Made by a program: the position numbers and the translations under genes. Of a stretch of DNA of 64,000 nucleotides, positions 7,006 through 50,722 are shown in pieces. Numbering within the stretch: the stretch's first letter is position 1; every line of letters starts with the position of its first letter. Source of the stretch: Selaginella moellendorffii (lineage: Eukaryota > Plantae > Lycopodiophyta); NCBI RefSeq assembly GCF_000143415.4, contig NW_003314319.1, positions 335,181 through 399,180 on the forward strand. Reading direction: 5' to 3'. Below the pieces are notes generated by a model. The model was not told the origin of the DNA. It did no database searches and was given only the letters and a program-made list of their open reading frames with translations.

Positions 7006-7009
7006 ATAA

Positions 7010-17964: not shown

Positions 17965-17969
17965 AATGG

Positions 17970-21009: not shown

Positions 21010-21685
21010 ATTCCAGGTAACTCAAGGCACCTCCATCACAGGCGCCAACACAACCCCAGAATCCCCGGGAGGCCAGCGCTTCGACTCTGTCATGGGAGTA
21101 GATGGAGCCCTCTCCATCCTCGCCGATGCCATGGCCTTCGTCCAGCTTGGCTTCGAGTATATGAGCCCCGACACACCCAAGAAGGAGATTGACACCATCC
21201 ACTTCACAGTGGACGGCATGCCTGGGGTGGCCTACGCCATTGGTGTGGAGATCCATCTCAGCGCACAGTTTGTTGCTACTTTCACTGGAGACTTGGTTTT
21301 TGAGCTCCGAGGCGTCTTGTACCACGAGATGACTCACATTTGGCAGTGGTTCGGCAAGGACGGGAGCCGGGCGCCGCAGGGACTGATCGAGGGGATTGCC
21401 GACTTTATGAGGCTCAAGGCTAAGCTAGGTGTGTCGACCAATGGGTTTGTGGGGTCGGGGAGCCACTGGGACGAGGGGTATACCGTGACTGCACTGTTTC
21501 TAAACTATGTCAACGATCTCTATCCCAGCTTTGTGGCAGAGCTTAACAAGAAGCTCTATGACGGGTGGAGTGAAAACTACTTCCAGGATCTGACTGGAAA
21601 GAGTGTGGATCAGTTGTGGAGCGATTACAAACTGAACTTTGTTTATAGATTTTGTCTGAAGAATGGAACCAAATTGTCATTATGA
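21010..21685 (+). pseudogene. 5'-truncated BSP/PR-17 gene (signal peptide codons lie at 32364-32395; altered C-terminus)
   Basis: Begins at attccaggta (codon 11-12 of the intact copy); contains HEMTH; a short deletion removes the native stop. Confidence 0.85.
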
Positions 21686-22549
21686 AATATACATCAATTA
21701 AGAGTCTTAGATAATGGTAAAACTAAATAGCCCTTTAGCTATTACAACCTAAATTTATAATTAAAGAGTTTATAAAGAGTAAATTATTATAATTGAATAC
21801 TTTAGATTATTTTTTGGATTGTTTAAGCAAACCTGTAAGTTATAAATGTATTTATGATTATTGATCATTTAGATTATTCAATAATAGTAAACAGGAATGA
21901 CACTATTATAACCAAACATTGCTACATGCATAGTGCAGCTATTAAAAATGCAAAATAATGAGAATTTTAATGGTTTGTTTAATATTCAAGATAATATACT
22001 TTAAAACTAAAGCATTAGTGTTAGTAAATAGATTTTGTATTTGTCTTTGGGCAACTTGCCATGTGGCAATCTTCATTATAATTTTTTTCCTATGCTCTCT
22101 CTATTTTATAGTTAGTTAATTATTATTTACTTTTTGAGTTTCTAATCTTTCATGTAATTTATTATCATGAAGATTATTGTATACTGCTTCTAATCACTTT
22201 ATCTACCAAAAGAAGTCTTACACTGTATTTAATCTCACCAAATTAAATAGTAAATATTTGCTAATGATTGTTACAATTTTTTCCTTTTTGATCATATATA
22301 TTAATATCCATTGCATACAAGAGAATCTCATGGTCTTTCTTTTGCATGATTATCTGTCTTATTGAGAAATTATCCCATAAAACATCAACTATTGATGGGC
22401 TGGTTTGACTTTGCATTTAAAATAATAACTCAAGTGAGTAATTGCATATAATCTAAAATTTTTAGGCTAATCGGATTATGCGTAGAAGTTTACTATTCAT
22501 TTCAGCAGCTTGTAGAAGTTTTACTTTTCATTTCAGCAGCTAACATCTA

Positions 22550-24216
22550 TTAATCAATTAATCTCTTTCGAAGAGTGACACTATAAAACTTTGTTGTTCT
22601 AATGGACAAGATCAAGCTCACAATGGATGCAAACAAACACACTCCAGCCATTACGAAAAAGGTTGTTCTGTAGCAATGTGGTCCATGGCAAAGGAGCTCA
22701 TCACCATCCAAACTTCCATTGCTCGGTCCAAGCTTACTCTCGCAGTCGTATAAAACTCCTGCCACCCGGACGGACAAAACATAAGTTCCCAGAGCCTTAG
22801 CGACGTAAGTTACATTTTGGAGCGTCCCATAGAACCTGAGCCCGAAGATCTCCGCTATCATGGTGTAAAGAACCGACCACTGGCCACCGATTGACAGCCC
22901 AATCAAAACCCAGCCGTAGAAGAGCGCTCCGGGAAGCCCAAGAGCGATTATCAAGCTCCCAAGCGACAGAAGCAAGAGAACCAGGCACAGGAAGAAGGGC
23001 CTTGCGACGCCATAGCTGGCGAGGCATATGTCCGAGATGAAGCCAACGCCAACGCCACCGTTGAAGTCCCAGATGCTAAGGAGGGCGATGAAAGTGTTTG
23101 TTCCGGCCTGGGAGTAGCCAAGGGACGTTCCAATCTGGCCGAAATTGTTGGTCACGGTTAGCACAGCGCCAATGCCACAGGTTGAAGCCACGAAGATGAG
23201 AAACATGTCGATGCTACAGAGCGCCTGGAGGATTGTGAAATCGTCTCCTCGCTTGACGGGCGATCCTTTAAAGAAGAAGATCGAAATGTGCGAGGCGATG
23301 GCTGGAGCAGCGGCGTCTGCCCCATGATCCGGAGGATCTACGTCTTGATAATCTGTTTGAGGAGTTTCTATCGCTGCGTTCTCCACTAGATCAACATCAA
23401 CTTCTTCGCGAAGGCGATGCCGGAGGGTTTTGGATTCCTGTCTCAGAACCACAAGAACTGGGATGGAGAGAATGATCAGCATAATGGAAAAGAAGGCCTT
23501 GATGATCCGAGACTCTAGGCGCACGAAGTGCTGGAGGATGATATAGCCATGAGATATCCAGCCAGGATCAAAGTTACTGACAAGAAGACGAAGAGCGTTC
23601 TCGAGTCATTGTAGCGACCGTCGAGTGGGACGGATCGAATGGAAAACGCGAAGAGAAGGCACAAGAGTGATGGAAACCAGGCCAGCAAGAGAACGAATGA
23701 ATCGTCATTGCGAGAGAAAAAGGCCTGGTAAAGCAGCGTGAACATCGCAACGCTCAATCCCTGCGTACTGTCGAGAAGACTAAGAACCATGCCCTGGTTC
23801 TTGGGGAAATTCTTGGCACAGGCCACAAGAACAGCGGTGGTGGTGAAGGCTGCCGATGCGCCGATCATAAAGAGATAGAAGCACAGTTCCCAGACATGGG
23901 GTTGTGCTATTCTCTGCGTTGTAGCCAGCCATATCGTGAAGTATCCAGCAAAGTTTAGCGCGAATCCAAGGAGGAGCACGACCCAGGGCCCGGTGAGATC
24001 ATAGAGGAGGCCGGAGAGAATCCCGACGCTGGTGCCAACGTCCTTAAATAAGCTTATGGTGTTGATATTTTTTTGGTTGTAGTCGAGGGACAGCTTGAGA
24101 TGCTGCGAGAAGAGGCTGAAGTTGTTGAGTGCTCCTCCCGTGGAGATCATGAGGAAGAAACTTGCCAATGCAACCATCCATTGACTGTTGTAGAGGTGTT
24201 TGATCGTCCCAACCAT
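22550..24216 (-). pseudogene. Nodulin-like MFS transporter, frameshifted (1-bp deletion near 23543)
   Basis: ORFs of 233 and 324 aa join to match the intact 556-aa copy at 55192-56862. Confidence 0.9.
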
Positions 24217-24684
24217 GATCCTAAGCTAAACTTTAGATTGAAATAAGAGTGGAGAGCATATATATTTAAAGGAAGAAATTCAAATCGAAAGAGAACATAT
24301 TCACTGTCTTAGTTTTTCTACCCGGCTCTTTCAGAAAGAAATTGTGTCCAAGCAGCGCACAACAAGGACTGAAGACCAGGAAGATCTGCAAGATGTAGCT
24401 CTAATTTTCAATCGTGGCATTCTTGCATCCATCAGTCTCATGCTTACAACTATCTATTTATGTTATTTCGGTAATCTTGTGACTGATGGATGTAGAAAAT
24501 CGAAGCCGCGATGTCGGCTCCCTCCTTCGCTGCTGCTGCCGGCTTCGTCGCTTACTATCCAGAGTCTCGAAAAAGAAAAGACGTGATGTTTTAAGGAATT
24601 GAGGCGATGGCCAGGTGGGCTGCCACCTAGAAAGAAGGTCTTTCGCGGCCACCAACTTGGACTTTAACATCATGAAAAATCAAC

Positions 24685-24692
24685 TATATAAA
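24685..24692 (+). promoter_or_regulatory. Putative TATA box of the 2ODD gene within a ~530-bp divergent MFS/2ODD intergenic region
   Basis: TATATAAA ~55 bp upstream of ATG 24746, present in all three copies. Confidence 0.55.
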
Positions 24693-24745
24693 CCCACCAA
24701 TTCTATGCAACCTCATTCATCTTGTTTCCTCCTAATTTTGTAGCT

Positions 24746-25970
24746 ATGCCTTCCTTTGTTGCAAATGTCAATCAGCAGACTGATGTTCTTCCAAAGGGTG
24801 TCAAAGCTCTCATGGATAATGGCCTCGTTACCATTCCTGGCCGTTATATCAAACCTCCCAGCCACCGAGCTGTGAAGCATTTGATCGTTCCTGGAGTGGA
24901 GATCCCTGTGATTGACATGGCTGCATTGGAGAGTGACCGAGAGAAATTTGTTCAAACTTTGTGCAAGGCTTCGAGTGAATGGGGCATCTTTCAGGTATTT
25001 TGATGTGTACCTGCTCAAAAGGATCATTCATAATATGATGTCACATGCAGGTGATCAACCACGGGATTCCTGTTGCAACCATGCAAGGCATGGTCCATGG
25101 AGTGCTTGAGCTCTTTGATCTTCCTATTGAGGAGAAGATGAAGTATTATACGGAGGAGGTGTTTGTGCCCGTGCGGTACTGCACGAGTATGACACCTTCT
25201 CAAGAGACTCATATGGAGTGGCACGACCACTTTCAGCACTACTTTTCAAACAGAGAAAAAGAGCATCCATGGCCGGAAAAACCAGCCTGCTACAAGTAAA
25301 TGAGCTTGACTAATCTGGATTTCATGAGATTGCTTGGTTTCTTGGATATTGCAGGAGGCTCGCTTCCAGCTATGTTTCAAGCGTGAGACATCTGAGTCAG
25401 ACTCTGATGTCTGCTTTGTCTGAAGGACTCGGGCTGGATTCAAACTGCCTCGCGAAATCGTTTGGAGACTCGGAGATGATCTTGCGATCAAATTACTATC
25501 CGCTGTGCCCAAATCCCGACCTTGCTCTTGGGATGAATGGCCACACCGATAGTGGCGGTTTGACAATCCTGTTTGAAGATCAAGTTGGCGGACTCCAGGC
25601 CAGGAAAGGTGATCTCTGGTACGACTTGAAGCCTATAAAGAATGCATTCATTGTGAACATCGCTGATCAGCTTGAAGTAAGTGACTTGGATTGATTTTTA
25701 TCATGGCTTTGTTCTTTTCCATGCCAGATTTTGAGCAATGGAAAATACAAGAGCATTGAGCACCGAGTCCTTGTCCAGCCTGATCAAACTCGTCTCTCCA
25801 TCGTGGCATTTTGCAATCCATCACGGGATGCTGTGATAGGACCCCTGCCAGAACTTATTGATGAGCAAAACCCGCCACTCTACAAGTCAACCTTATACCA
25901 AGAGCACATCACAAATGTCTACACAAAATATTTGGATGGCAAGCATTCACAAAAGCTCCAAATAAACTAA
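24746..25970 (+). CDS. 2-oxoglutarate/Fe(II) dioxygenase, DOXC class (DMR6/F6'H/flavonoid-2ODD-like), 352 aa; exons 24746-24994, 25051-25295, 25355-25676, 25728-25970
   Basis: WGIFQVINHGIP, HTD...H iron ligands, RLS 2OG motif and three GT-AG introns. This copy has YYPLCP instead of the conserved YYPPCP. Confidence 0.92.
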
Positions 25971-26149
25971 ACCAACGAGCTGTTAACTAAATAAAATAAT
26001 ACAAATAATAAATCTTCTCGCCATCCCCCTGTCAAGGCAGCTCAGTTTCGCAAGATCTGATCCAGGGTCGAGCTCCTTGCCTTATTTTATAAGAGAGAAC
26101 TGTCTCCAAAGATCTCTACAAAGGCAGGATGCTCCACAGCTCCATTCTT

Positions 26150-26647
26150 GCTTCGCCGTTGCTAAGTTCATTTAGTGCTCATGTACGTGGAACTGCAGCA
26201 GGCCTGGAGATCTTCAATATCTACTAGCTTGAAAGATCTATTGTGTTCCTAAACTCTCCAGGCCGAGACACCCCATTATCACGTCGAAGACCCTTCAAGC
26301 ATCCGTGAAGCTTTGCAATCATGGATCAGTGATGCATGGAAGAGGTCCTAGCTCTAGAGGCCCTGGAAGCGCCAAAGTGAAGCAAGTCCAAGAGTGCATT
26401 GGTGGACAGGTTCACGGCCGAGGCAACCCAGCTGCGAATCAACAGTCATGGACAGTGCACTAGTCGTCTATATGAATTGCTTGGCATCATTTGGCCACCT
26501 CATCTCACTGAATCTCAGCACCAATTCACTCTCTGGCACAATCCTTAGATTGCTGGGTGATATTCCAATGCTATGGACGACCTTGAATCTTGATGCTCAA
26601 CTAAATCTGCAAGATCATTAACAAGGAGATTCCAAAATCTCTAGAGA
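26150..26647 (+). pseudogene. LRR receptor-like gene relic
   Basis: LISLNLSTNSLSGTI plant-specific LRR motif with disrupted frames. Confidence 0.65.
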
Positions 26648-27467
26648 ATCTCACAATCAAACTTGCCTAAAGCATTGGCCCACCAACCTTATTTCCCTCT
26701 TAAGTCGGGTTGTGATAACAAGTGTTTCATTGCCATATTATTCGTGTAAACTTTGAAGTGTCTCCCAAGGTAATGTCACCACTCCTTGAGTGTTTTGATC
26801 ACCGCAAATAATTTCTTCTCATGGGTAGGCCACTTTTGCTAAGCTTTCTTCAACTTCTTTGAGAAGAACATTATCTTGCTTCAAAACTGTGCCTAACGCA
26901 AAGTTTGAAGTATCCATTTCTACCTCAAAGTCTTTACCAAAGTTTAGTAATGCCAACACAGGAGCCTTCCTCAACTTCTTTTGAGATGGATAAATGCCAC
27001 CTCGCTGTCCATACCATTTTCCCTTTTCCTGTTTAGTCCATTAAAGGTAGGGGTATTTTTAAATAGTGTTTGAAAACTTTCAGTAGTAGTTACATAACCC
27101 TAACAATGCTCTTAATTTGTGTACATTCAATAGTTATTCCCATTCCTAGATCGCTTAGACCTTTTCAAGATCCACCTTGAGCCCATCTTTGCTTACCACA
27201 TGCCCAAGAAACTTTACCTCTTATTGAGAAAAGTTATATTTGTTCGTTTTAATATATAGTTGGTGTTCTTTTAATTTCTCAAACACCTTCGTCAAGTGTT
27301 CAACATGCTCTTCTAGCGTCTCGCTATAAATCAAGATATCTGTCAATGTAGATGACCACAAAATGCTTTAGGTAAAGTACAAAAATGTGGTTCATCAATG
27401 CCGAGAACGTTCCTAGTGCATTGCACAGCTTAAAGGGCATCATTAGAAACTCAAAACTTCCATTCTA
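26648..27467 (-). mobile_element. Gypsy RT/RNase H fragment at the junction of duplication blocks A and B
   Basis: Minus strand gives MPFxLCNA, VIYID and KFLGHVV; same family as the element at 34140-36000. Confidence 0.8.
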
Positions 27468-27850
27468 AATCTAAAATCGTATGTGTCAAATGATGTGTAA
27501 ACTTTCTCAAAGCTAGAGGTGCAAGTAGTAGCAGTGAAGGACCTTTCAGACAGACTCCACGTCTGGGAGCCATAGTGACGGACCATGACAGCATTGCTGG
27601 CTTAAGTGTTCCCATCAACACCATGCCCATGATGGTGTTTATCAGGTGAATCTCCCACTGTTTGTATGCGTTCTATATATGCTTTTGTTTATACAGGTCT
27701 GTGTTTCGTGCTTTGAGGGAGAGTGAGTGTGCCCGTGTACTCGGGCTGTTCCCGTACCTCCAAGTTTGGCACAACCTCAGCATGAGCCAGGCTACACCAT
27801 GTGCAATCGATGGATCTGATGAACCTCCGCGCCCAAAACCAAAACACTAA
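27468..27850 (+). pseudogene. 3' fragment of the deaminase-like gene
   Basis: Matches 49841-50214; lacks the N-terminus and the CAE motif; carries transition mutations. Confidence 0.85.
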
Positions 27851-29818
27851 TTGCGTATATGGTGTGGTATTAATTCCATAAGGAAACGTGTGAAGTTAAT
27901 AAGTATATAAGCTGTCCTAGATAAATTTCCTTGATTATTCCTTGGTCACGCTCTCTCCAAAAAATCAAATCATCAAAACGAACCTGGAAATTTGGTTGCA
28001 GATAAAAATAATGGAAACTCTGTATGTGAATCGCTGTGGAGAATTCGACAATGCAGCATGTCAGGTGGCTACGCTCAGAGCAAGCAAGTTACGGAAAATG
28101 TAGACTGCAAATGCAATGCTGGCAGCATACGAACCATGCTGGCTTGTAACCTCTTCCTAGACCATTCTCATGCTATGCCCTGGCTGAAGCTGTATTAATC
28201 TTCCAAGGGAAGGGATGCTATGGTCTTTGTGCGCCTGTTGCAGCCGCCTGAGAAACCTTCCAAAGTATGACAGCCGACATCCACATTCAACCGAATTAGT
28301 TCTGCATGGTCGATCTGTTCGGTACAACACGACTTCTGTTTGTTCCCAAAGGATATCTATGCCTGGGAGATCCTACCCGCCTCCTGTACAAACATGCTGG
28401 CCCAGCACTAATATGTACGTGATGCTCGAGAAGCAGAAGCCAAATGTGCTCACTGCTGCTGCTGTAATATCTGTCTCAGTGCATTTACAATATGAGGAAC
28501 CGTTGCCGGACCCGGCTGCACCCATGCTCGTTTTTAACTGTGCCATTTGAAGCTGAAACGCCTTCTTTCCCAACCGGGTTAAGCAATCCGGCGGTTCTAT
28601 CCGCAAAAATCTTAGGTGTGCCGCCAGCTGCAGTGCCCTGGAACAAGATCAGGAGAGAGATTTTATAGGGTATTGACATGGTTAAATGGGGAGCTGGAAC
28701 ACCATAGCCTCAATTGAGATTCTTCAGTATGGATTGACAATGCACCAGATGCTCCATTCCTTTGTTCAGCACTAGCTGTCACAGCTCTGTGGATCCGGCT
28801 GGCTCGAGAACGCCTTTCTTGGCCTTTGCCCCACGAACCGGTTCGAAATTGCTGCGAACATAGAGATGCCAAGCGACTCTCAGGCGTCTTGATCCTGGAG
28901 AAAATCGAAAGTCAAGTTACAAACATATGCAAACAATTGGATGAAATCGAACCTCAGCCCAGACGCTGCTGCATTCGGCTTTTCAAATAAACTGTATCTC
29001 TTTTAGTTCTGGCAAGGCCGAGACCAGCAGCCGGCTCTCCGGAACGAATATCCGAATGAGAACGAGAAGCCTGCCATCCCTAGGGCTTAACGAGCAGACT
29101 TGTAAATCTCGAATATGGCGGATCCAGGTAGCTGCATTTGGCTTCGTGCTGCTGGAAGCGGCTGTGCTGTGTCCAATGCTGGGTGCCTTCGTGTCCTGCC
29201 CAAAGGGTCACCGTTTCAAGATCTGCGCTTCATGCGGGCAACAAAATAAGGCTGGTCTTGTCTCCCACGAGCTCACTCTACTGGTATGTGCTTCAATTAT
29301 CTGCATTTCTCGTGGACTTGAGTGTAAAGCTCCTCAGGATTCGTCTGATTGTAGGATCTTTGCTGCTCATGGAGCTTGCTGTGCTGGTGCAACTATGGGT
29401 GACCATCAAGCAAGAAAAGAGACAGCACTTTTCAGTGAAGCTGGAATCGATGCCGCAATTCTGGTGAATGCTTCCAGCTTGCTTCCTTTGTTCTTCTTAA
29501 AAGAGCGTCCAGGGTGCATGGATGCAGAAGGACCGGACCCAGCGATCAGTCAACTGACAAGTCTCAAGGACATCCTGGTATTGAAATAGAAGACGATATG
29601 ACTTGTTTCGTCTTGTTGCACTGTGTTGAAAGATCACGCTGACTTGACGCTGTTTGCAGATCCAGCAAACTTACGGCCCCATAGCACTAAATTCAAGAGA
29701 GACCTGGATGCTCGTGCAAAAGAAGAAGAGGAACTCTTCTACGTACGTTGGAACTCAGGCGTTCTCATACCGGGTATGTCAGGATTGCTTCGCTTATCTT
29801 CTCTTTTCCGCTTGTTTT

Positions 29819-31935
29819 CTAAATCACGAGTCCGCTTAACAGCTCGGTTCCCAATCTCAACTTGCCGAGGCTTCTGCAAGCCGCCAGCACGGCCCTCCAC
29901 ACCACAGCATCGCCCTCCACTGGAGAGCTTACCACGAAACGTACCATCTCCTCAAACTTCCCGGCTCGCCCTAGAAGATCGACCATGCACACGTAGTACT
30001 TCGCAGCGGGGGCGATCCCATAGTTGCTCCTCATCGACACAAAGCTGCAGTGAGCGTCCTAGAGCCCGGCGTGGCTACACGCCGAGAGGACGCTGACGAA
30101 GTTGATGGAGTTTGGCATGGTGTCGGATCCCATTTGCATCACTCGGAAGAGCGTGAGAGCTCGCACCGCGTGGCCGTGGCGATCGTAGGCTCCCACCATT
30201 GCACTCCAGGTTATCACGTCTTCTCTTCGCAGCTGGAAGAACAGCGTCCAGGCTCCCGTATTTGCTGTAGAGATTGAGCACTGCGTTGCCGAGTAGAACG
30301 TCCAGCTCCACTCCCCTCTCGCAAATCCAGCCGTGGACTCGCTTGCCATCTTTCAAGGAGGAGATCTCCGTGCAGGCAATGATAGCGTTTACGGAAGTGT
30401 GGTTGTTCATCCGGAATCCTTCTAACTGCATGTGTGAATCGAGTACGATTTTTCCATGCTGGTACTGTACGTAGATCGTGATCAAGGCTTTCCACGACGT
30501 CGCATCCTTGTGAGAGATCTTGGCGAAGGCTTCTCGTGCATCAAGCAAGCTCCCACACTTTGCAAACATGTTGACGAGCGCGTTCCCCACGATCTTGTTA
30601 GAGGAGTCATAGCCGGACTCCACGGTGAATCTGTCGGCCCCCGCGCAGAAACGCCGGGGACGAGCACGCATTGAGCGCCGCCAGGAGAGTTACGTTGTTC
30701 GGCCTCACGCTCTCTAGCTGCATGCGCCAAAGAAACACCATCCCCTGCAGTCCTTTTCCATTGCCTTGCTCCGCGAGAGCTGCAATGATCGACGACCAGG
30801 CGACTGCGTCTGGACAATCCATGCTCTGGAAAACTCTCCTCGATTCAAATGCGCTGCCACACCTCCCGGGAATACATGGTTATCAGCGTGTTTCCTACAA
30901 ATGGGACGCTCTGGAAGCCACACTCTTCGATCAAACCGTGGACAAAACATCCAGCCTTGAGGACGCCGCAAGCCTCTAAAACCGCCACGAAAGCTCATCT
31001 GGCTCGACACCATTGAGCAGCATCAGACAAAAACACTCGAGGGAAGACCTCGTTTCCTCGTGTTCTACGTAAGCGCTGATCATGGCAGACCATGCAAACT
31101 TGTTCTTGCAGCTCATCCGCTCAAAAATCTCTCGCGCTTCCGCAAGGCTGCCACACTTTGCATACATATGAACAAGGCTCGTTCCGGCTGTGACGTCCGT
31201 CTCATGGAGAACATCCTCCGGAAGACAAGAGTGAATGAGTCTGCCGGTCTTCAGGAACATTGGGCCGCAGCAAGCCTTGAGGAGTGTAACGAATCCGATT
31301 TTTCCAATCTTGACGCCCTCGAGCTGCATGACAAAGAGCATTTTCACTGCATCCGACTGATGCCCATTTTGGGCATATGCTGAAACAATGGCGTTCCAAG
31401 ACCCTGTGTTTCGGAAATACATTCTATCTAAGAAAGCTCTGGCTTGGTCGATTTGGCTGCATTTTCCATACATGTTGATAATCTCATTTGAGATTATCAC
31501 ATTCTTCTCCAGCCCACGATCCGCTATTATTTTGTGTACCACAATGCCCCCTGCGAGAGCGCCGTGTGTGGGGCAAAGATTGAGCGCTGGCAAGAGGGCG
31601 GTTTGATCCGGGAGAATTCCCTGCTCCTCCATCTCGTTCAGCAGGCCAACAGCCCCTCCGATTGATCCACATGAGCCGTGAGCCGTGATGAGCGCGCTCC
31701 ACGAGAGAGAGCTCCTCTTACTCGCGTCAAGGCTTTGGAACACAGCCTTGGCATCGTCCAAATGCCCGCACTTGCCATACATGTCGATGAGGTGATTCGC
31801 GAGACGCCCATCCCTTTCAAGGCGGCCCAGACGGGAGATATGGGCGTGGAGCTTCCTACCACCATCGACCAATCGCAGGGATGTGCAGGTGAGGAGGAGA
31901 TGGATGAGCTCTTCCGGCTCCAGGCGATCTGGCAA
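29819..31935 (-). pseudogene. PLS-class PPR (E-subclass) pseudogene
   Basis: LIDMYGKCG, SWNAIVSAYAQNG, FVSVLSACSHAGL, YVCMVDLLGRAG and E-motif WRAVLAAC; several frameshifts. Confidence 0.9.
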
Positions 31936-33130: not shown

Positions 33131-33189
33131 CTTTGTGTGATCAACACATTGTTTTGACCATAGGTTGACATTGCGATGTTCCACAACAC

Positions 33190-34135: not shown

Positions 34136-34139
34136 TGAT

Positions 34140-39147: not shown

Positions 39148-39221
39148 CGTCTACAAAGATATTTCCATCTTGTTCAATTTACTCATGAAATCTAAGAAGA
39201 AAGAAATACATATAAGTATTT

Positions 39222-39707: not shown

Positions 39708-40270
39708 CTAAGCAAAATCTTGAGAAACAAAAAGCGACAGGCTAGTTTTGAGGAAGTAGATGGCAGTGACCTCTCCAGAGATTTTGGAATCTCCTTGTTG
39801 AAGATCTTGCAGATTTAGTTGAGCATCAAGATTCAAGGTCGTCCATAGCATTGGAATATCACCCAGCGATCCAGGGATTGTGCCAGAGAGTGAATTGGTG
39901 CTGAGATTCAGTGAGATGAGGTGGCCAAGTGATGCCAAGCAATTCATATAGACGACTAGTGCACTGTCCATGACTGTTGATTCGCGGCTGGGTTGCCTCG
40001 GCCGTGGACCTGTCCACCAATGCACTCTTGGACTTGCTTCACTTTGGCGCTTCCAGGGCCTCTAGAGCTAGGACCTCTTCCATGCATCACTGATCCATGA
40101 TTGCAAAGCTTCACGGATGCTTGAAGGGTCTTTGAAGTGATAATGGGGTGTCTCGGCCTGGAGAGTTTAGGAACACAATAGATCTTTCAAGCTAGTAGAT
40201 ATTGAAGATCTCCAGGCCTGCTGCAGTTCCACGTACATGAGCACTAAATGAACTTAGCAACGGCGAAGCA
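39708..40270 (-). pseudogene. LRR receptor-like gene relic
   Basis: LGHLISLNLSTNSLSGTIPGSLG. Confidence 0.65.
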
Positions 40271-40448
40271 AGAATGGAGCTGTGGAGCATCCTGCCTTTG
40301 TAGAGATCTTTGGAGACGGTTCTCTCTTATAAAATAAGGCAAGGAGCTCGACCCTGGATCAGATCTTGCGAAACTGAGCTGCCTTGACAGGGGGATGGCG
40401 AGAAGATTTATTATTTGTATTATTTTATTTAGTTAACAGCTCGTTGGT

Positions 40449-41673: not shown

Positions 41674-42202
41674 AGCTACAAAATTAGGAGGAAACAAGAT
41701 GAACGAGGTTGCATAGAATTGGTGGGTTTATATAGTTGATTTTTCATGATGTTAAAGTCCAAGTTGGTGGCCGCGAAAGACCTTCTTTCTAGGTGGCAGC
41801 CCACCTGGCCATCGCCTCAATTCCTTAAAACATCACGTCTTTTCTTTTTCGAGACTCTGGATAGTAAGCGACGAAGCCGGCAGCAGCAGCGAAGGAGGGA
41901 GCCGACATCGCGGCTTCGATTTTCTACATCCATCAGTCACAAGATTACCGAAATAACATAAATAGATAGTTGTAAGCATGAGACTGATGGATGCAAGAAT
42001 GCCACGATTGAAAATTAGAGCTACATCTTGCAGATCTTCCTGGTCTTCAGTCCTTGTTGTGCGCTGCTTGGACACAATTTCTTTCTGAAAGAGCCGGGTA
42101 GAAAAACTAAGACAGTGAATATGTTCTCTTTCGATTTGAATTTCTTCCTTTAAATATATATGCTCTCCACTCTTATTTCAATCTAAAGTTTAGCTTAGGA
42201 TC

Positions 42203-43869
42203 ATGGTTGGGACGATCAAACACCTCTACAACAGTCAATGGATGGTTGCATTGGCAAGTTTCTTCCTCATGATCTCCACGGGAGGAGCACTCAACAACTT
42301 CAGCCTCTTCTCGCAGCATCTCAAGCTGTCCCTCGACTACAACCAAAAAAATATCAACACCATAAGCTTATTTAAGGACGTTGGCACCAGCGTCGGGATT
42401 CTCTCCGGCCTCCTCTATGATCTCACCGGGCCCTGGGTCGTGCTCCTCCTTGGATTCGCGCTAAACTTTGCTGGATACTTCACGATATGGCTGGCTACAA
42501 CGCAGAGAATAGCACAACCCCATGTCTGGGAACTGTGCTTCTATCTCTTTATGATCGGCGCATCGGCAGCCTTCACCACCACCGCTGTTCTTGTGGCCTG
42601 TGCCAAGAATTTCCCCAAGAACCAGGGCATGGTTCTTAGTCTTCTCGACAGTACGCAGGGATTGAGCGTTGCGATGTTCACGCTGCTTTACCAGGCCTTT
42701 TTCTCTCGCAATGACGATTCATTCGTTCTCTTGCTGGCCTGGTTTCCATCACTCTTGTGCCTTCTCTTCGCGTTTTCCATTCGATCCGTCCCACTCGACG
42801 GTCGCTACAATGACTCGAGAACGCTCTTCGTCTTCTTGTCAGTAACTTTGATCCTGGCTGGATATCTCATGGCTATATCATCCTCCAGCACTTCGTGCGC
42901 CTAGAGTCTCGGATCATCAAGGCCTTCTTTTCCATTATGCTGATCATTCTCTCCATCCCAGTTCTTGTGGTTCTGAGACAGGAATCCAAAACCCTCCGGC
43001 ATCGCCTTCGCGAAGAAGTTGATGTTGATCTAGTGGAGAACGCAGCGATAGAAACTCCTCAAACAGATTATCAAGACGTAGATCCTCCGGATCATGGGGC
43101 AGACGCCGCTGCTCCAGCCATCGCCTCGCACATTTCGATCTTCTTCTTTAAAGGATCGCCCGTCAAGCGAGGAGACGATTTCACAATCCTCCAGGCGCTC
43201 TGTAGCATCGACATGTTTCTCATCTTCGTGGCTTCAACCTGTGGCATTGGCGCTGTGCTAACCGTGACCAACAATTTCGGCCAGATTGGAACGTCCCTTG
43301 GCTACTCCCAGGCCGGAACAAACACTTTCATCGCCCTCCTTAGCATCTGGGACTTCAACGGTGGCGTTGGCGTTGGCTTCATCTCGGACATATGCCTCGC
43401 CAGCTATGGCGTCGCAAGGCCCTTCTTCCTGTGCCTGGTTCTCTTGCTTCTGTCGCTTGGGAGCTTGATAATCGCTCTTGGGCTTCCCGGAGCGCTCTTC
43501 TACGGCTGGGTTTTGATTGGGCTGTCAATCGGTGGCCAGTGGTCGGTTCTTTACACCATGATAGCGGAGATCTTCGGGCTCAGGTTCTATGGGACGCTCC
43601 AAAATGTAACTTACGTCGCTAAGGCTCTGGGAACTTATGTTTTGTCCGTCCGGGTGGCAGGAGTTTTATACGACTGCGAGAGTAAGCTTGGACCGAGCAA
43701 TGGAAGTTTGGATGGTGATGAGCTCCTTTGCCATGGACCACATTGCTACAGAACAACCTTTTTCGTAATGGCTGGAGTGTGTTTGTTTGCATCCATTGTG
43801 AGCTTGATCTTGTCCATTAGAACAACAAAGTTTTATAGTGTCACTCTTCGAAAGAGATTAATTGATTAA
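42203..43869 (+). pseudogene. Nodulin-like MFS transporter, frameshifted (1-bp deletion near 42876)
   Basis: gctatatcatc versus intact gctattatcatc; same lesion as copy 1. Confidence 0.9.
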
Positions 43870-44679
43870 TAGATGTTAGCTGCTGAAATGAAAAGTAAAA
43901 CTTCTACAAGCTGCTGAAATGAATAGTAAACTTCTACGCATAATCCGATTAGCCTAAAAATTTTAGATTATATGCAATTACTCACTTGAGTTATTATTTT
44001 AAATGCAAAGTCAAACCAGCCCATCAATAGTTGATGTTTTATGGGATAATTTCTCAATAAGACAGATATTCATACACAAGAAAGACCATGAGATAAATCA
44101 TTTCTCTTGTATGCAATGGATATTAATATATATGATCAGAAAGGAAAAAATTGTAACAATCTTAAGCTTCATGATAATAAACTACATGAAAAATTAGAAA
44201 CTCAAAGAGTAAATAATAATTTAACTACTATAAAATAGAGAGAGCATATGCCCAAAGACAAATATAAATTTTTTTTACTTACACTAATGCTTTAGTTTTA
44301 AAGTAGCAATGTTTGGTTATAGTAGTGTCATTCCTGTTTAGTATTATTGAATAATCCAATGATAAACATATTTATAAATTATAATACAAAATTAATTTTA
44401 ATTAATAACAACTGTTACATGGATCCTAGACTATCCAAGCTATCCATTACCATTATAGGTTTGCTTAAGCAATCAAAAAAATAATCTAAAGTATTCAATT
44501 ATAATAATTTACAGTTGACAATTATAACAAATTTAATGGGTGACTCTTTCATTATAAATTTAGGTTGTAATAGCTAAAGGGCTATTTAATTTTACCATTA
44601 TCTAAGACTCTTATTTGATGTATATTTCATAATGACAATTTGGTTCCATTCTTCAGACAAAATCTATAAACAAAGTTCA

Positions 44680-45348
44680 TCATTGAAATTTCTGTTTGAA
44701 ATCACTCCACAACTGATCCACACTTTTTCTAATCAGATCCTGGAAGTAGCTTTCACTCCACCCGTCATAGAGCTTCTTGTTAAGCTCTGCCACAAAGCTA
44801 GGATGGAGATCGTTGACATAGTTTAGAAACAGTGCAGTCACGGTATACCCCTCGTCCCAGTGGCTCCCCAACCCCACAAACCCATTGGTCGACACACCTA
44901 GCTTAGCCTTGAGCCTCATAAAGTCGGCAATCCCCTCGATCAGTCCCTGCGGCGCCCGGCTCCCGTCCTTGCCGAACCACTGCCAAATGTGAGTCATCTC
45001 GTGGTACAAGACGCCTCGGAGCTCAAAAACCAAGTCTCCAGTGAAAGTAGCAACAAACTGTGCGCTGAGATGGATCTCCACACCAATGGCGTAGGCCACC
45101 CCAGGCATGCCGTCCACTGTGAAGTGGATGGTGTCAATCTCCTTCTTAGGTGTGTCGGGGCTCATATACTCGAAGCCAAGCTGGACGAAGGCCATGGCGT
45201 CGGCAAGGATGGAGAGGGCTCCATCTACTCCCATGACAGAGTCGAAGCGCTGGCCTCCCGGGGATTCTGGGGTTGTGTTGGCGCCTGTGATGGAGGTGCC
45301 TTGAGTTACCTGGAATGTTGCTAGGATAATGAGGAGAAAAATTGCCAT
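44680..45348 (-). CDS. Plant basic secretory protein (BSP/PR-17 family) with HExxH metallopeptidase-like motif
   Basis: Hydrophobic N-terminal signal MAIFLLIILATF; GVLYHEMTHIWQW; GLIEGIADFMRL; WDEGYTVTALFL; GKSVDQLW-type C-terminus. Confidence 0.93.
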   Translation of the reverse strand: MAIFLLIILATFQVTQGTSITGANTTPESPGGQRFDSVMGVDGALSILADAMAFVQLGFEYMSPDTPKKEIDTIHFTVDGMPGVAYAIGVEIHLSAQFVATFTGDLVFELRGVLYHEMTHIWQWFGKDGSRAPQGLIEGIADFMRLKAKLGVSTNGFVGLGSHWDEGYTVTALFLNYVNDLHPSFVAELNKKLYDGWSESYFQDLIRKSVDQLWSDFKQKFQ

Positions 45349-45755
45349 TTTCTTTATGTTTTTCTTTTCCTCCTTATATCATTTGAGTTATTATTTCAAA
45401 TGTAGAGTCAGTCTATGTTTCCTGGGATAGTTTCTCAATAAGACAGATGATAAAACAGTTATTTACTTTATTTTTCCGGCATCTTTCCTAAAGGTAGACC
45501 CCATTGTTAATCAAAACGATGAGAAAAACAAAGGGTGGCACCTGCAAAAAAGAAAGTTTTAGAAACAAATCGCAAAAGGAGAGAGAAATCGCAAAGATGG
45601 AAGGATTCCAAGGATGCGAGAGAAACTTTCGGGACAAAGAGAAAATCTCACCACCAAGTCTACTAGAGCGCTCAATTAGCATGCGAGAGGCACTAGGATT
45701 GATACTCTCTACATTCCTTTTCTTTCTCTTCTTTGTTTTCGTATGCCCTTAATCT

Positions 45756-47872
45756 TTGCCAGATCGCCTGGAGCCGGAAGAGCTCATCCATCTCCTCCTC
45801 ACCTGCACATCCCTGCGATTGGTCGATGGTGGTAGGAAGCTCCACGCCCATATCTCCCGTCTGGGCCGCCTTGAAAGGGATGGGCGTCTCGCGAATCACC
45901 TCATCGACATGTATGGCAAGTGCGGGCATTTGGACGATGCCAAGGCTGTGTTCCAAAGCCTTGACGCGAGTAAGAGGAGCTCTCTCTCGTGGAGCGCGCT
46001 CATCACGGCTCACGGCTCATGTGGATCAATCGGAGGGGCTGTTGGCCTGCTGAACGAGATGGAGGAGCAGGGAATTCTCCCGGATCAAACCGCCCTCTTG
46101 CCAGCGCTCAATCTTTGCCCCACACACGGCGCTCTCGCAGGGGGCATTGTGGTACACAAAATAATAGCGGATCGTGGGCTGGAGAAGAATGTGATAATCT
46201 CAAATGAGATTATCAACATGTATGGAAAATGCAGCCAAATCGACCAAGCCAGAGCTTTCTTAGATAGAATGTATTTCCGAAACACAGGGTCTTGGAACGC
46301 CATTGTTTCAGCATATGCCCAAAATGGGCATCAGTCGGATGCAGTGAAAATGCTCTTTGTCATGCAGCTCGAGGGCGTCAAGATTGGAAAAATCGGATTC
46401 GTTACACTCCTCAAGGCTTGCTGCGGCCCAATGTTCCTGAAGACCGGCAGACTCATTCACTCTTGTCTTCCGGAGGATGTTCTCCATGAGACGGACGTCA
46501 CAGCCGGAACGAGCCTTGTTCATATGTATGCAAAGTGTGGCAGCCTTGCGGAAGCGCGAGAGATTTTTGAGCGGATGAGCTGCAAGAACAAGTTTGCATG
46601 GTCTGCCATGATCAGCGCTTACGTAGAACACGAGGAAACGAGGTCTTCCCTCGAGTGTTTTTGTCTGATGCTGCTCAATGGTGTCGAGCCAGATGAGCTT
46701 TCGTGGCGGTTTTAGAGGCTTGCGGCGTCCTCAAGGCTGGATGTTTTGTCCACGGTTTGATCGAAGAGTGTGGCTTCCAGAGCGTCCCATTTGTAGGAAA
46801 CACGCTGATAACCATGTATTCCCGGGAGGTGTGGCAGCGCATTTGAATCGAGGAGAGTTTTCCAGAGCATGGATTGTCCAGACGCAGTCGCCTGGTCGTC
46901 GATCATTGCAGCTCTCGCGGAGCAAGGCAATGGAAAAGGACTGCAGGGGATGGTGTTTCTTTGGCGCATGCAGCTAGAGAGCGTGAGGCCGAACAACGTA
47001 ACTCTCCTGGCGGCGCTCAATGCGTGCTCGTCCCCGGCGTTTCTGCGCGGGGGCCGACAGATTCACCGTGGAGTCCGGCTATGACTCCTCTAACAAGATC
47101 GTGGGGAACGCGCTCGTCAACATGTTTGCAAAGTGTGGGAGCTTGCTTGATGCACGAGAAGCCTTCGCCAAGATCTCTCACAAGGATGCGACGTCGTGGA
47201 AAGCCTTGATCACGATCTACGTACAGTACCAGCATGGAAAAATCGTACTCGATTCACACATGCAGTTAGAAGGATTCCGGATGAACAACCACACTTCCGT
47301 AAACGCTATCATTGCCTGCACGGAGATCTCCTCCTTGAAAGATGGCAAGCGAGTCCACGGCTGGATTTGCGAGAGGGGAGTGGAGCTGGACGTTCTACTC
47401 GGCAACGCAGTGCTCAATCTCTACAGCAAATACGGGAGCCTGGACGCTGTTCTTCCAGCTGCGAAGAGAAGACGTGATAACCTGGAGTGCAATGGTGGGA
47501 GCCTACGATCGCCACGGCCACGCGGTGCGAGCTCTCACGCTCTTCCGAGTGATGCAAATGGGATCCGACACCATGCCAAACTCCATCAACTTCGTCAGCG
47601 TCCTCTCGGCGTGTAGCCACGCCGGGCTCTAGGACGCTCACTGCAGCTTTGTGTCGATGAGGAGCAACTATGGGATCGCCCCCGCTGCGAAGTACTACGT
47701 GTGCATGGTCGATCTTCTAGGGCGAGCCGGGAAGTTTGAGGAGATGGTACGTTTCGTGGTAAGCTCTCCAGTGGAGGGCGATGCTGTGGTGTGGAGGGCC
47801 GTGCTGGCGGCTTGCAGAAGCCTCGGCAAGTTGAGATTGGGAACCGAGCTGTTAAGCGGACTCGTGATTTAG
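45756..47872 (+). pseudogene. PLS-class PPR (E-subclass, no DYW) pseudogene
   Basis: Same as 29819-31935; frame breaks near 46700, 47065, 47445 and 47630. Confidence 0.9.
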
Positions 47873-49840
47873 AAAACAAGCGGAAAAGAGAAGATAAGCG
47901 AAGCAATCCTGACATACCCGGTATGAGAACGCCTGAGTTCCAACGTACGTAGAAGAGTTCCTCTTCTTCTTTTGCACGAGCATCCAGGTCTCTCTTGAAT
48001 TTAGTGCTATGGGGCCGTAAGTTTGCTGGATCTGCAAACAGCGTCAAGTCAGCGTGATCTTTCAACACAGTGCAACAAGACGAAACAAGTCATATCGTCT
48101 TCTATTTCAATACCAGGATGTCCTTGAGACTTGTCAGTTGACTGATCGCTGGGTCCGGTCCTTCTGCATCCATGCACCCTGGACGCTCTTTTAAGAAGAA
48201 CAAAGGAAGCAAGCTGGAAGCATTCACCAGAATTGCGGCATCGATTCCAGCTTCACTGAAAAGTGCTGTCTCTTTTCTTGCTTGATGGTCACCCATAGTT
48301 GCACCAGCACAGCAAGCTCCATGAGCAGCAAAGATCCTACAATCAGACGAATCCTGAGGAGCTTTACACTCAAGTCCACGAGAAATGCAGATAATTGAAG
48401 CACATACCAGTAGAGTGAGCTCGTGGGAGACAAGACCAGCCTTATTTTGTTGCCCGCATGAAGCGCAGATCTTGAAACGGTGACCCTTTGGGCAGGACAC
48501 GAAGGCACCCAGCATTGGACACAGCACAGCCGCTTCCAGCAGCACGAAGCCAAATGCAGCTACCTGGATCCGCCATATTCGAGATTTACAAGTCTGCTCG
48601 TTAAGCCCTAGGGATGGCAGGCTTCTCGTTCTCATTCGGATATTCGTTCCGGAGAGCCGGCTGCTGGTCTCGGCCTTGCCAGAACTAAAAGAGATACAGT
48701 TTATTTGAAAAGCCGAATGCAGCAGCGTCTGGGCTGAGGTTCGATTTCATCCAATTGTTTGCATATGTTTGTAACTTGACTTTCGATTTTCTCCAGGATC
48801 AAGACGCCTGAGAGTCGCTTGGCATCTCTATGTTCGCAGCAATTTCGAACCGGTTCGTGGGGCAAAGGCCAAGAAAGGCGTTCTCGAGCCAGCCGGATCC
48901 ACAGAGCTGTGACAGCTAGTGCTGAACAAAGGAATGGAGCATCTGGTGCATTGTCAATCCATACTGAAGAATCTCAATTGAGGCTATGGTGTTCCAGCTC
49001 CCCATTTAACCATGTCAATACCCTATAAAATCTCTCTCCTGATCTTGTTCCAGGGCACTGCAGCTGGCGGCACACCTAAGATTTTTGCGGATAGAACCGC
49101 CGGATTGCTTAACCCGGTTGGGAAAGAAGGCGTTTCAGCTTCAAATGGCACAGTTAAAAACGAGCATGGGTGCAGCCGGGTCCGGCAACGGTTCCTCATA
49201 TTGTAAATGCACTGAGACAGATATTACAGCAGCAGCAGTGAGCACATTTGGCTTCTGCTTCTCGAGCATCACGTACATATTAGTGCTGGGCCAGCATGTT
49301 TGTACAGGAGGCGGGTAGGATCTCCCAGGCATAGATATCCTTTGGGAACAAACAGAAGTCGTGTTGTACCGAACAGATCGACCATGCAGAACTAATTCGG
49401 TTGAATGTGGATGTCGGCTGTCATACTTTGGAAGGTTTCTCAGGCGGCTGCAACAGGCGCACAAAGACCATAGCATCCCTTCCCTTGGAAGATTAATACA
49501 GCTTCAGCCAGGGCATAGCATGAGAATGGTCTAGGAAGAGGTTACAAGCCAGCATGGTTCGTATGCTGCCAGCATTGCATTTGCAGTCTACATTTTCCGT
49601 AACTTGCTTGCTCTGAGCGTAGCCACCTGACATGCTGCATTGTCGAATTCTCCACAGCGATTCACATACAGAGTTTCCATTATTTTTATCTGCAACCAAA
49701 TTTCCAGGTTCGTTTTGATGATTTGATTTTTTGGAGAGAGCGTGACCAAGGAATAATCAAGGAAATTTATCTAGGACAGCTTATATACTTATTAACTTCA
49801 CACGTTTCCTTATGGAATTAATACCACACCATATACGCAA

Positions 49841-50722
49841 TTAGTGTTTTGGTTTTGGGCGCGGAGGTTCATCAGATCCATCGATTGCACATGGTGTAGC
49901 CTGGCTCATGCTGAGGTCGTGCCAAACTTGGAGGTACGGGAACAGCCCGAGTACACGGGCACGCTCACTCTCCCTCAAAGCGCGAAACACAGACCTGTAT
50001 AAACAAAAGCATATATAGAACGCGTACAAACAGCACCTGATAAACACCATCACGGGCATGGTGTTGATGGGAACACTTAAGCCAGCGATGCTGTCATGGT
50101 CCGTCACTATGGCTCCCAGACGTGGAGTCTGTCCGAATGGTCCTCCACTGCTACTACTTGCACCTCCAGCTTTGAGACAGTTTACACATCGTTTGACGCA
50201 CACGACATTAGATTCGCCTTTCTTCTTCTGGTGCTTCTGCACGGCGTAAGTTGTATCAGCCGACTCATTCAATCGTGCCAGCTTCTCGAATACAACATGC
50301 TCCGCACAGTTCTCGAAGTCGCGGCCCTTACTGGGTTTGGCCTCTTTATCCTCGTCGAGAAGTGCCAAGTGGAGCCTGGAATGGGTGTCATCATCAAAAG
50401 CTGAGACTTGAACTCCCAGCCTCTTCTCCACATCCTTGATGCTTACTGGATTTGGTCTACCCCCTGCCATGTCCATCCTCAAACGAACGTTAGCACCCAC
50501 AACTCTTGTTCCTTGTTCCGTGACTCCACAGCACAGCACATCGCTCACTTGCCCCTTCTTTGCATGCTCAATAGGAGCCTGGCGAACCAACATCCCCAAG
50601 TGCAAAATGCGCAGGAAATGGATGAATGCGTCCCCATCGCTGAGACCTGGAATACCTTGCAATGCATTCCACAGCTTTTGAGCATCGGCAAGGTTCACCT
50701 GCTCAGAATCCTTTGAGGCCAT
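49841..50722 (-). CDS. Orphan protein with putative Zn-dependent cytidine-deaminase-like fold (probable start MASK at 50722; probable in-frame 42-nt intron 49995-50036)
   Basis: Uninterrupted 328-codon ORF; VLCCGVTEQGTRVVGAN, NCAEHVVFEKL and KRCVNC occur in deaminase order. Confidence 0.65.
   Translation of the reverse strand: MASKDSEQVNLADAQKLWNALQGIPGLSDGDAFIHFLRILHLGMLVRQAPIEHAKKGQVSDVLCCGVTEQGTRVVGANVRLRMDMAGGRPNPVSIKDVEKRLGVQVSAFDDDTHSRLHLALLDEDKEAKPSKGRDFENCAEHVVFEKLARLNESADTTYAVQKHQKKKGESNVVCVKRCVNCLKAGGASSSSGGPFGQTPRLGAIVTDHDSIAGLSVPINTMPVMVFIRCCLYAFYICFCLYRSVFRALRESERARVLGLFPYLQVWHDLSMSQATPCAIDGSDEPPRPKPKH

What the first reader, a model, noticed from the sequence alone, without database searches (positions are those of the whole stretch)
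21010..50214. Inverted, circularly permuted ~10.4-kb duplication: footprint of a reintegrated DNA circle
Seen in sequence: the right segment 39772-50214 runs LRR-2ODD-MFS-BSP-PPR-deaminase(3'). The left copy holds the same DNA inverted but with its halves swapped: block A 21010-26647, then an 820-bp retro fragment, then block B 27468-32395. Block B ends at ...ctagcaac (32395) and block A begins at attccagg (21010). These are adjacent bases (45317/45316) of the intact BSP gene, with only a 1-bp overlap. Inference: the segment was circularised (junction carrying a Gypsy RT piece), reopened inside BSP and integrated nearby. A simple inverted duplication cannot give this order.
Basis: partly seen in the sequence, partly recalled or inferred. 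Interest (0 to 1): 0.8.

Follow-up and report, generated by a model that had tools for sequence, protein, structure and literature searches.

The report
Permuted inverted gene-block duplicate, spikemoss
A 10.4-kb block of spikemoss (Selaginella moellendorffii) genes really is present a second time, upside-down and with its two halves swapped, but a re-inserted DNA circle is only one of two equally sufficient explanations, the other being an ordinary tandem duplication followed by an inversion.

Summary
Observation confirmed to the base. Window 21009-26647 is the reverse complement of 39772-45317. Window 27468-32395 is the reverse complement of 45317-50214. An 820-bp Ty3/Gypsy pol fragment lies between the two left blocks. 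Both outer ends of the left copy map to one point, 45316/45317, inside the signal peptide of an intact BSP gene.

The genome is Selaginella moellendorffii. The right copy keeps the ancestral arrangement, because six other BSP protein models of the genome and angiosperm BSPs have the same uninterrupted N-terminus. This rules out a staggered-break inversion.

The order requires a head-to-tail joined intermediate. A free circle is sufficient but not necessary. A tandem duplication R-filler-R, then one inversion (one break in BSP, one at 21008|32396), then a recombinational flip between the inverted arms gives the same order and the same junctions. It also explains why the copy lies only 7.4 kb from its source, in a multi-copy cluster.

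The arms show a mosaic that points to gene conversion: 4,292 bp and 3,750 bp nearly identical, with edges 4-8% diverged. That makes such flips plausible.

I lean to the local route (about 0.5) over circle re-integration (about 0.3). The other haplotype or long reads would decide; the tool that could have fetched them was closed. This is a new member of a known kind, of moderate interest.

The parts
39772..50214 (+). Unit R, the ancestral arrangement. It holds an LRR fragment, 2ODD, frameshifted nodulin-like MFS, intact BSP, a frameshifted PPR, unknown ORFs and the 3' part of a 328-aa ORF. R1 = 39772-45317 and R2 = 45317-50214.
21009..26647 (-). Block A' = reverse complement of R1. It holds BSP without its start, MFS, 2ODD and a truncated LRR fragment.
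26648..27467 (-). 820-bp filler: a degraded Ty3/Gypsy pol fragment (RT C-terminal part plus RNase H N-terminal part). Its nearest relative in the window is 34147-34427, at only 82-83% identity, so that copy is not the donor.
27468..32395 (-). Block B' = reverse complement of R2. It holds the 3' part of the 328-aa ORF, unknown ORFs, PPR, and the BSP promoter with the first 10 codons.
32396..39771 (.). Spacer M between the inverted arms. It holds a PPR pseudogene (32396-33120, minus strand) cut exactly at the junction, Gypsy fragments (33192-34427) and tandem repeats (36484-36809, 38904-39137).
44680..45348 (-). Intact BSP gene (222 aa, PF04450). The breakpoint 45316/45317 lies in codon 11, inside the signal peptide.
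21002..21685 (+). Left BSP copy. It has no start codon (a stop lies 6 codons upstream in the flank) and a 14-bp deletion that changes the C-terminus. It is annotated as the partial model P0122.
22351..26100 (.). Near-identical core of arm A'/R1: 3 substitutions in 3,750 bp.
27774..32065 (.). Identical core of arm B'/R2: 0 differences in 4,292 bp.
21456..22350 (.). Strongly diverged zone covering the BSP 3' end and downstream: 5-8% substitutions and indels of 8-88 bp. Both copies carry private changes.
26412..27773 (.). Filler together with its two flanks. The flanks (26412-26647 and 27468-27773) carry left-copy-specific, CpG-biased C>T changes: 9 and 16 substitutions.
54441..59815 (.). Older material. 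A 2ODD fragment in R orientation (54441-54939, 73-78%) abuts the older partial copy C (55051-59815, rc of R 39725-44393, about 96% in genes). C holds an intact 556-aa MFS ORF and ends at a retroelement.

Best explanation
This is a real inverted and circularly permuted segmental duplicate of a 10.4-kb gene block, in a multi-copy gene cluster of Selaginella moellendorffii. Three things are shown. The right copy R is the ancestral arrangement. The left copy has its outer ends (39772 and 50214) fused through an 820-bp Gypsy fragment. The left copy is opened at one point in the BSP signal peptide, with blunt joins or 1-bp overlap to unrelated flanks. It follows that the order needs a head-to-tail joined intermediate. 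My preferred route is inferred, not shown. (1) R duplicated in tandem, with the Gypsy fragment captured at the duplication junction, giving a-M-R1R2-f-R1R2-b. (2) Two double-strand breaks, one at a|M (21008|32396) and one inside BSP of one unit, were rejoined by end joining in inverted orientation. (3) Homologous recombination between the resulting 5-kb inverted arms flipped the spacer and gave the present isomer, the only one of the three without direct repeats and so the deletion-stable one. The same arm-to-arm recombination (gene conversion) keeps the arm cores identical. The block edges, and a zone interrupted by indels, escape that conversion. The flanks of the methylation-prone Gypsy filler decay by C>T. 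The consequence is structural, not a new function. The left copy adds one apparently intact 2OG-dioxygenase copy. It also adds dead copies of BSP (no start), MFS (shared frameshift), PPR, the LRR fragment and the 328-aa ORF.
For: Geometry and junctions. R is ancestral for three reasons. The BSP ORF with ATG and signal peptide runs across 45316/45317 and aligns with angiosperm BSPs; four full-length BSP paralogues and two other gene models on three scaffolds of the same genome are uninterrupted across this point. The third copy C continues 47 bp past 39772. A 328-aa ORF is open across 50214. The symbolic test shows that tandem duplication plus one inversion plus an arm flip gives exactly the observed block order by either of two paths, while a plain inverted duplicate needs at least 3 inversions. 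Evidence that the arms recombine: 0 differences in 4,292 bp and 3 in 3,750 bp against 4-8% at edges, with P about 1e-14 for such a run under uniform divergence. Locality: the copy is 7.4 kb from its source. The same window holds an older inverted copy and a fold-back junction. The cluster has at least 5 BSP loci on this scaffold and more on two others. The joins carry no transposon signature.
Against: No tandem R-filler-R junction is seen in the window, so step 1 is hypothetical. The route needs three events, although the third is cheap. The free-circle route yields the identical sequence, so nothing in the window favours one route directly; my preference rests on prior plausibility (proximity, local tandem amplification). 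The a|M ancestral adjacency is not demonstrated: the PPR pseudogene at 32396 does not continue into the left flank, so either DNA was lost at the break or the pseudogene was already truncated. The age is uncertain. With copy C as outgroup, R shows few private changes even at the A' right edge. The 5-8% zone may therefore be a patch from another paralogue and not old divergence.
Confidence: 0.48

Rival explanations
1. Re-integrated circle. The segment 39772-50214, or a replicated copy of it, or a unit popped out of a tandem pair by recombination, was circularised with a Gypsy pol fragment ligated between its ends. The circle was broken once in BSP and inserted by end joining, in inverted orientation, into a break at 21008|32396.
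For: The copy is exactly one unit long, with both outer ends at adjacent bases and a 1-bp overlap, and a fusion junction joins the source's ends. The joins are blunt or have 1-bp microhomology, with no TIR or TSD. This is the signature used for cattle KIT and for human segmental duplications (PMC7450558; Durkin 2012 as cited in PMC12722694). Only two events are needed.
Against: The same junction set arises without a free circle. Insertion 7.4 kb from the source would be a striking coincidence for a free molecule in a genome of about 100 Mb (genome size from my own knowledge, not checked here). [quoted passage not shown] The perspective I read cites germline re-integration only from animals (PMC12722694). 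No circle, empty site or intermediate could be examined.
Confidence: 0.3
2. One-step replicative rearrangement (template switching or microhomology-mediated break-induced replication). A broken fork or the two tethered ends of one break at 21008|32396 primed at the same open site in BSP. They copied outwards in both directions (or once round a transient circular template), switched through a Gypsy element and were joined.
For: The filler is a templated-looking 820-bp insertion. There is imperfect similarity (11 of 18 bases) between the LRR end and Gypsy-family sequence at the A'|filler junction. Left-specific mutation clusters lie next to the filler.
Against: On a linear template, starting and stopping at the same base is an unexplained coincidence. 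The mutation clusters are CpG-biased and not strand-coordinated, which fits methylation decay better than single-strand damage. The 5.6-kb and 4.9-kb tracts are long for template-switch inserts.
Confidence: 0.1
3. Assembly artefact. The two haplotypes are both present in the v1.0 assembly (PMC3680112). On this reading, haplotypes or paralogous units were mis-joined, or the assembler took the wrong path through the identical cores.
For: Exact identity runs of 2.4-4.3 kb exceed Sanger read length, so the path through the arms, meaning which isomer was printed, rests on mate pairs that I cannot see.
Against: There is no N in the window. All four novel joins lie in sequence that differs from the other copy. 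The left copy has its own indels and substitutions. Homology stops sharply at unrelated flanks, which is not expected for mis-joined alleles. A wrong path through the arms would only exchange one isomer for another and would leave the same junction set.
Confidence: 0.06
4. Inversion by staggered breaks, which duplicates the sequences at both breakpoints in inverted orientation. This gives a-X-rc(Y)-rc(mid)-rc(X)-Y-b, the same geometry as here, with the R1|R2 join as the new junction.
For: The block order and the shared breakpoint follow automatically from this model.
Against: The model requires that 45316|45317 is a novel join. That join lies inside a normal BSP signal peptide that is uninterrupted in six other BSP models of the genome and aligned in angiosperm homologues. 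The left BSP has a stop 6 codons upstream and no start.
Confidence: 0.01

Closest known systems
Circular-intermediate segmental duplications and translocations: cattle KIT colour-sidedness (Durkin et al. 2012, Nature 482:81, cited in PMC12722694) and human cSDPs (Chicote et al. 2020, PMC7450558)
   Same: The block order is flipped from A-B/C-D to B-A/D-C. The source's ends are fused. There is a single opening point. Joins have 0-2 bp microhomology or short indels, and a repeat element sits at a breakpoint.
   Different: Here the copy is inverted and lies 7.4 kb from its source in a multi-copy cluster, so a purely chromosomal route (tandem duplication plus inversion plus arm flip) is open. The fusion junction carries an 820-bp filler instead of a direct join. 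No independent allele or empty site was available.
Inverted segmental duplicates or palindromes homogenised by arm-to-arm gene conversion, with recurrent spacer inversion by non-allelic homologous recombination (general knowledge, e.g. sex-chromosome palindromes; not checked in a paper here)
   Same: The arms have near-zero divergence in their cores and diverged edges, with a spacer of a few kb. The structure admits flip isomers.
   Different: There are two separate arm pairs in permuted order with a filler between them, and the arms are small (5.6 and 4.9 kb).
Tandem segmental amplification of the 2OG-dioxygenase + nodulin-like MFS cassette elsewhere in this genome (earlier scan notes s1-422229 and s1-344424, unchecked)
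   Same: The gene pair is the same, and local copy-number growth recurs.
   Different: Those are described as direct tandem arrays on other scaffolds. This one is inverted and permuted.

Membership tests
Circle-mediated (circularly permuted) segmental duplication | Derived copy shows the source's two halves in swapped order (A-B/C-D to B-A/D-C) | tested here: met
Circle-mediated (circularly permuted) segmental duplication | Both outer ends of the derived copy map to one point of the source (single opening) | tested here: met
   45317 and 45316/45317, 1-bp overlap
Circle-mediated (circularly permuted) segmental duplication | Fusion junction joining the source's two outer ends | tested here: met
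   39772 and 50214 joined through an 820-bp Gypsy pol fragment
Circle-mediated (circularly permuted) segmental duplication | No homology at the joins, only microhomology or short indels; no transposon ends | tested here: met
Circle-mediated (circularly permuted) segmental duplication | Location that excludes a local chromosomal route (non-tandem, distant from the source) | tested here: not met
   The copy is 7.4 kb from the source and inverted. One search shows that a tandem plus inversion plus flip route gives the same result.
Circle-mediated (circularly permuted) segmental duplication | Independent evidence for the circle or for the empty acceptor site | not testable with these tools
No plant genome collection was at hand.
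Tandem duplication + inversion + NAHR flip of inverted arms | Junction set and block order reproducible by these steps | tested here: met
   two paths
Tandem duplication + inversion + NAHR flip of inverted arms | Evidence that the inverted arms recombine | tested here: met
   mosaic of identical cores and diverged edges, P about 1e-14
Tandem duplication + inversion + NAHR flip of inverted arms | A surviving head-to-tail R-filler-R junction or alternative isomer in another haplotype or accession | not testable with these tools
   Other BSP units exist on this and two other scaffolds, but their DNA could not be fetched.
Staggered-break inversion with duplicated breakpoints | The R1|R2 join is novel and the flank|A' and B'|flank joins are ancestral | tested here: not met
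   the BSP N-terminus is contiguous across the join in paralogues and homologues
Transposon-mediated gene capture (Helitron, Pack-MULE) | Terminal inverted repeats or Helitron ends, and a target-site duplication | tested here: not met
   the best TIR score is below the shuffled mean, and there is no TSD at the joins

The most novel reading that the evidence does not exclude
A gene-carrying extrachromosomal circle (10.4 kb of host genes plus a captured Gypsy fragment) re-entered the germline genome of a lycophyte and became fixed. This would be a heritable, base-resolved footprint of circle-mediated gene-block duplication in a plant, later stabilised as an inverted repeat by gene conversion.
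Probability: 0.3. Interest if true: 0.65.

Novelty: new member of a known kind. Interest (0 to 1): 0.4.

Why it matters
Circularly permuted duplicates are used as the diagnostic footprint of re-integrated circular DNA (cattle KIT, human segmental duplications). This locus is a clean, base-resolved plant example of that geometry. It also shows the limit of the diagnostic. When the copy lies near its source in inverted orientation and the arms can recombine, a tandem duplication plus one inversion gives the same sequence. If the circle route were proved, it would be a rare documented case of germline circle re-integration in a plant. If the local route holds, it is a caution for genome-wide screens that count permuted duplicates as circle footprints. 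Either way, the arms are a compact natural example of mosaic gene conversion, and of methylation-type decay spreading from a captured retroelement fragment.

Tried and rejected
(1) Staggered-break inversion. I derived it as a geometric rival and rejected it on BSP N-terminus continuity.

(2) Transposon capture. No TIR, TSD or Helitron ends.

(3) Filler as a recombinant of repeats flanking R. The filler has no match next to 39772 or 50214. Its only relative, 34147-34427, is 82-83% identical.

(4) Insertion into an intact PPR gene. The right flank is a PPR pseudogene ending at the join, but the left flank has no PPR continuation in any frame and none exists elsewhere in the window.

(5) Strand-coordinated single-strand damage at the filler joins. 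The changes are CpG-biased and mixed in strand on the B' side.

(7) Looking up junction-spanning ORFs as exact proteins. None is in the collection, which says nothing either way.

(8) Earlier scan notes searched for a tandem array with the same junction. None was found.

(9) I ran no further search on junction-spanning ORFs, because the chance of an informative hit was low.

(10) The spliced 2ODD model was not joined. Its exons were scanned as separate ORFs by reference.
Full report
OBSERVATION. Window 21009-26647 (A') is the reverse complement of 39772-45317 (R1). Window 27468-32395 (B') is the reverse complement of 45317-50214 (R2). Between them lie 820 bp (26648-27467) that are absent from the right copy. 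A plain inverted copy would read B'-A'; the left copy reads A'-filler-B'. Junction views show that A' begins and B' ends at the same base of the right copy (C at 45317), so the derived copy is exactly one unit long with a 1-bp overlap. The filler encodes, on the minus strand, broken pieces of reverse transcriptase (RVT_1) and of the RNase H typical of Ty3/Gypsy elements. The window holds no N.

ORGANISM AND CONTENT. The BSP protein of the right copy is identical to an annotated protein on a 1,263,218-bp scaffold, and its close relatives are all Selaginella moellendorffii. Pfam scans of ORFs, each given by reference, give these features for R:
- a short LRR fragment (39708-40025, minus strand);
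- a nodulin-like MFS (42203-43869, plus strand), split by a 1-bp deletion that R and the left copy share and the older copy C lacks;
- BSP (45348-44680, minus strand);
- a PPR gene broken into several frames (45756-47632);
- unknown ORFs;
- the 3' 124 codons of a 328-aa ORF (49841-50827, minus strand).
An older partial copy C (55051-59815, same orientation as A', about 96% identical in genes) and a 2ODD fragment (54441-54939) lie to the right.

WHICH COPY IS ANCESTRAL. The breakpoint 45316|45317 falls in codon 11 of BSP, between the hydrophobic core and the cleavage region of the signal peptide. The 222-aa ORF across it has the normal family length and aligns from its N-terminus with angiosperm BSPs. 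Four other full-length BSP paralogues of the genome, on three scaffolds, start with the same uninterrupted peptide, and two further gene models are also uninterrupted across the breakpoint. In the left copy the flank supplies a stop 6 codons upstream and no start. At 39772 the older copy C continues with R for 47 bp while A' switches to the filler. At 50214 the 328-aa ORF is open in R and cut in B'. R is therefore the ancestral arrangement. The inversion-with-duplicated-breakpoints model reproduces the geometry automatically but needs the R1|R2 join to be new, so it is rejected.

JOINS. The two outer joins (21008|21009 and 32395|32396) are blunt or have a 1-bp overlap. They have no terminal inverted repeats, no target-site duplication and no Helitron ends. 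The right flank is a frameshifted PPR pseudogene on the minus strand that stops exactly at the join. The AT-rich left flank does not continue it, and no continuation exists in the window. At A'|filler the LRR end and the Gypsy family sequence share an imperfect 11 of 18 bases. The only Gypsy relative in the window (34147-34427) is 82-83% identical to the filler, so it is not the donor.

MOSAIC DIVERGENCE. The two young copies are not uniformly 99% alike:

| Left-copy stretch | Differences from R |
|---|---|
| 21009-21455 | 3 substitutions (0.67%) |
| 21456-22350 | 5-8% substitutions plus indels of 8-88 bp |
| 22351-26100 | 3 substitutions in 3,750 bp |
| 26101-26411 | 3 substitutions (0.96%) |
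| 26412-26647 | 3.8% |
| 27468-27773 | 5.4% |
| 27774-32065 | 0 in 4,292 bp |
| 32066-32395 | 1 substitution (0.32%) plus indels of 1 and 20 bp |

A run of 4,292 identical bases has P of about 1e-14 under uniform divergence. With C as outgroup, all 9 differences in 26412-26647 are changes of the left copy, and 8 of them are of the C>T type. On the B' side, 13 of 16 substitutions are of the C>T type and 9 of those 13 are at CpG. That is 26% of the CpG cytosines there, against 0 of 462 in the core. I read this as methylation-type decay next to the captured retroelement. It is not strand-coordinated, so it does not look like damage to single-stranded ends. In the 21456-22350 zone both copies carry private changes. 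R has S160L, T206I, G207R and Y217F. The left copy has H182Y and a 14-bp deletion. The simplest reading is that the arm cores have been homogenised by gene conversion while edges and an indel-ridden zone escaped. The age stays uncertain. R shows few private changes where C can polarise them, so the 5-8% zone could instead be a patch from one of the other paralogous units.

MECHANISM. The order cannot come from a plain inverted duplication; an exhaustive search shows that at least three further block inversions are needed. Copying from a linear template by template switching leaves unexplained why copying began and ended at the same base. A head-to-tail joined intermediate is therefore required, and two routes supply it.

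A circle of one unit plus filler is opened once in BSP and inserted by end joining at 21008|32396.

Route B is chromosomal. It starts with a tandem duplication a-M-R1R2-f-R1R2-b. Two breaks follow, one at a|M and one in BSP of either unit, and the ends are rejoined in inverted orientation. Recombination between the resulting inverted arms then flips the spacer. The symbolic test shows that both versions of route B give exactly the observed order.

The two routes produce the same three novel joins with the same end-joining chemistry, and both predict that 21008 and 32396 were once adjacent. The window cannot separate them.

I lean to route B for four reasons. (i) The copy lies 7.4 kb from its source, which is natural for a local inversion and a coincidence for a free molecule. 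(ii) The identical cores show that the arms do recombine, so the flip costs little. The present isomer is also the only one without direct repeats, and so the one that resists deletion. (iii) The neighbourhood is a rearranging multi-copy cluster, with copy C, a fold-back join at 54939/55051, at least five BSP loci on this scaffold and more on two others. (iv) Earlier scan notes, unchecked by me, describe direct tandem amplification of the same dioxygenase-MFS pair on other scaffolds.

Against route B, no tandem junction has been seen.

ARTEFACT. The v1.0 assembly holds both haplotypes (PMC3680112). Mis-joined alleles would share flanks and order, and these copies do not. Each novel join sits in sequence that differs from the other copy, and the left copy has its own indels. 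What the assembly cannot guarantee is the path through 2.4-4.3 kb of exact identity, meaning which flip isomer is printed. A wrong path would change the description (permuted copy versus partial tandem plus inverted fragment) but not the junction set.

COMPARISON WITH KNOWN CASES. The geometry is the one used to infer circular intermediates in cattle (Durkin 2012, cited in PMC12722694) and in 16 human duplication pairs (PMC7450558). [quoted passage not shown] It is therefore a new member of a known kind of structure, with its mode of origin unresolved.

The second haplotype, the other units and the raw reads could therefore not be examined. Junction-spanning ORFs are not in the protein collection as exact sequences, which is uninformative.

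Noticed in passing
window 42875 (R), the same site in the left copy near 23543, and 55192-56862 (C): The nodulin-like MFS gene has the same 1-bp deletion in both young copies (ORFs of 233 + 324 aa). It is an intact 556-aa ORF in the older copy C. The transporter is therefore dead in the young units while the adjacent dioxygenase looks intact.
   Followed up: partly
window 26412-26647 and 27468-27773: Left-copy-specific, CpG-biased C>T decay is confined to about 240-300 bp on each side of the captured Gypsy fragment: 21-26% of CpG cytosines changed, against 0 of 462 in the adjacent core. This looks like silencing spreading from the retro fragment.
   Followed up: partly
window 49841-50827 (minus strand): A 328-aa ORF with no Pfam match even at E<=5. 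The duplication boundary at 50214 separates the CAE part (outside the duplicate) from the CxxC part (inside it).
   Followed up: partly
window 54441-55120: An older fold-back-like join. A 2ODD fragment in R orientation (R 40440-41041, 73-78% identical) abuts copy C, which runs in the opposite orientation from about R 44393. This shows an earlier inverted rearrangement of the same unit.
   Followed up: no
window 32396-33120 (minus strand): A frameshifted PLS-type PPR pseudogene is truncated exactly at the B'|spacer join. Its missing part is not in the window.
   Followed up: partly
window 21839-22261 vs 44165-44452 vs 55051-55120: 423 bp in the left copy replace 288 bp in R. A 58-bp piece of the left version matches copy C better (83%) than R does (73%), so R may be the altered copy here.
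   Followed up: no
window 5188-17968, 33192-34427, 60051-64000: There are nested retroelement remains, mutually 77-96% alike in both orientations. A 12-bp-based tandem repeat (36484-36809) recurs at 1-193, 1328-1455, 6174-6605 and 11918-12374. A 63-bp tandem repeat lies at 38904-39137.
   Followed up: no
proteins P0121/P0007, P0125/P0124, P0126, P0127, P0123 (outside the window): At least seven BSP copies of 90% or greater identity exist in the genome, on three scaffolds. P0121/P0007 shares Gly79 with R and the left copy, so it is their closest unit, and it lacks about 90 internal residues.
   Followed up: partly
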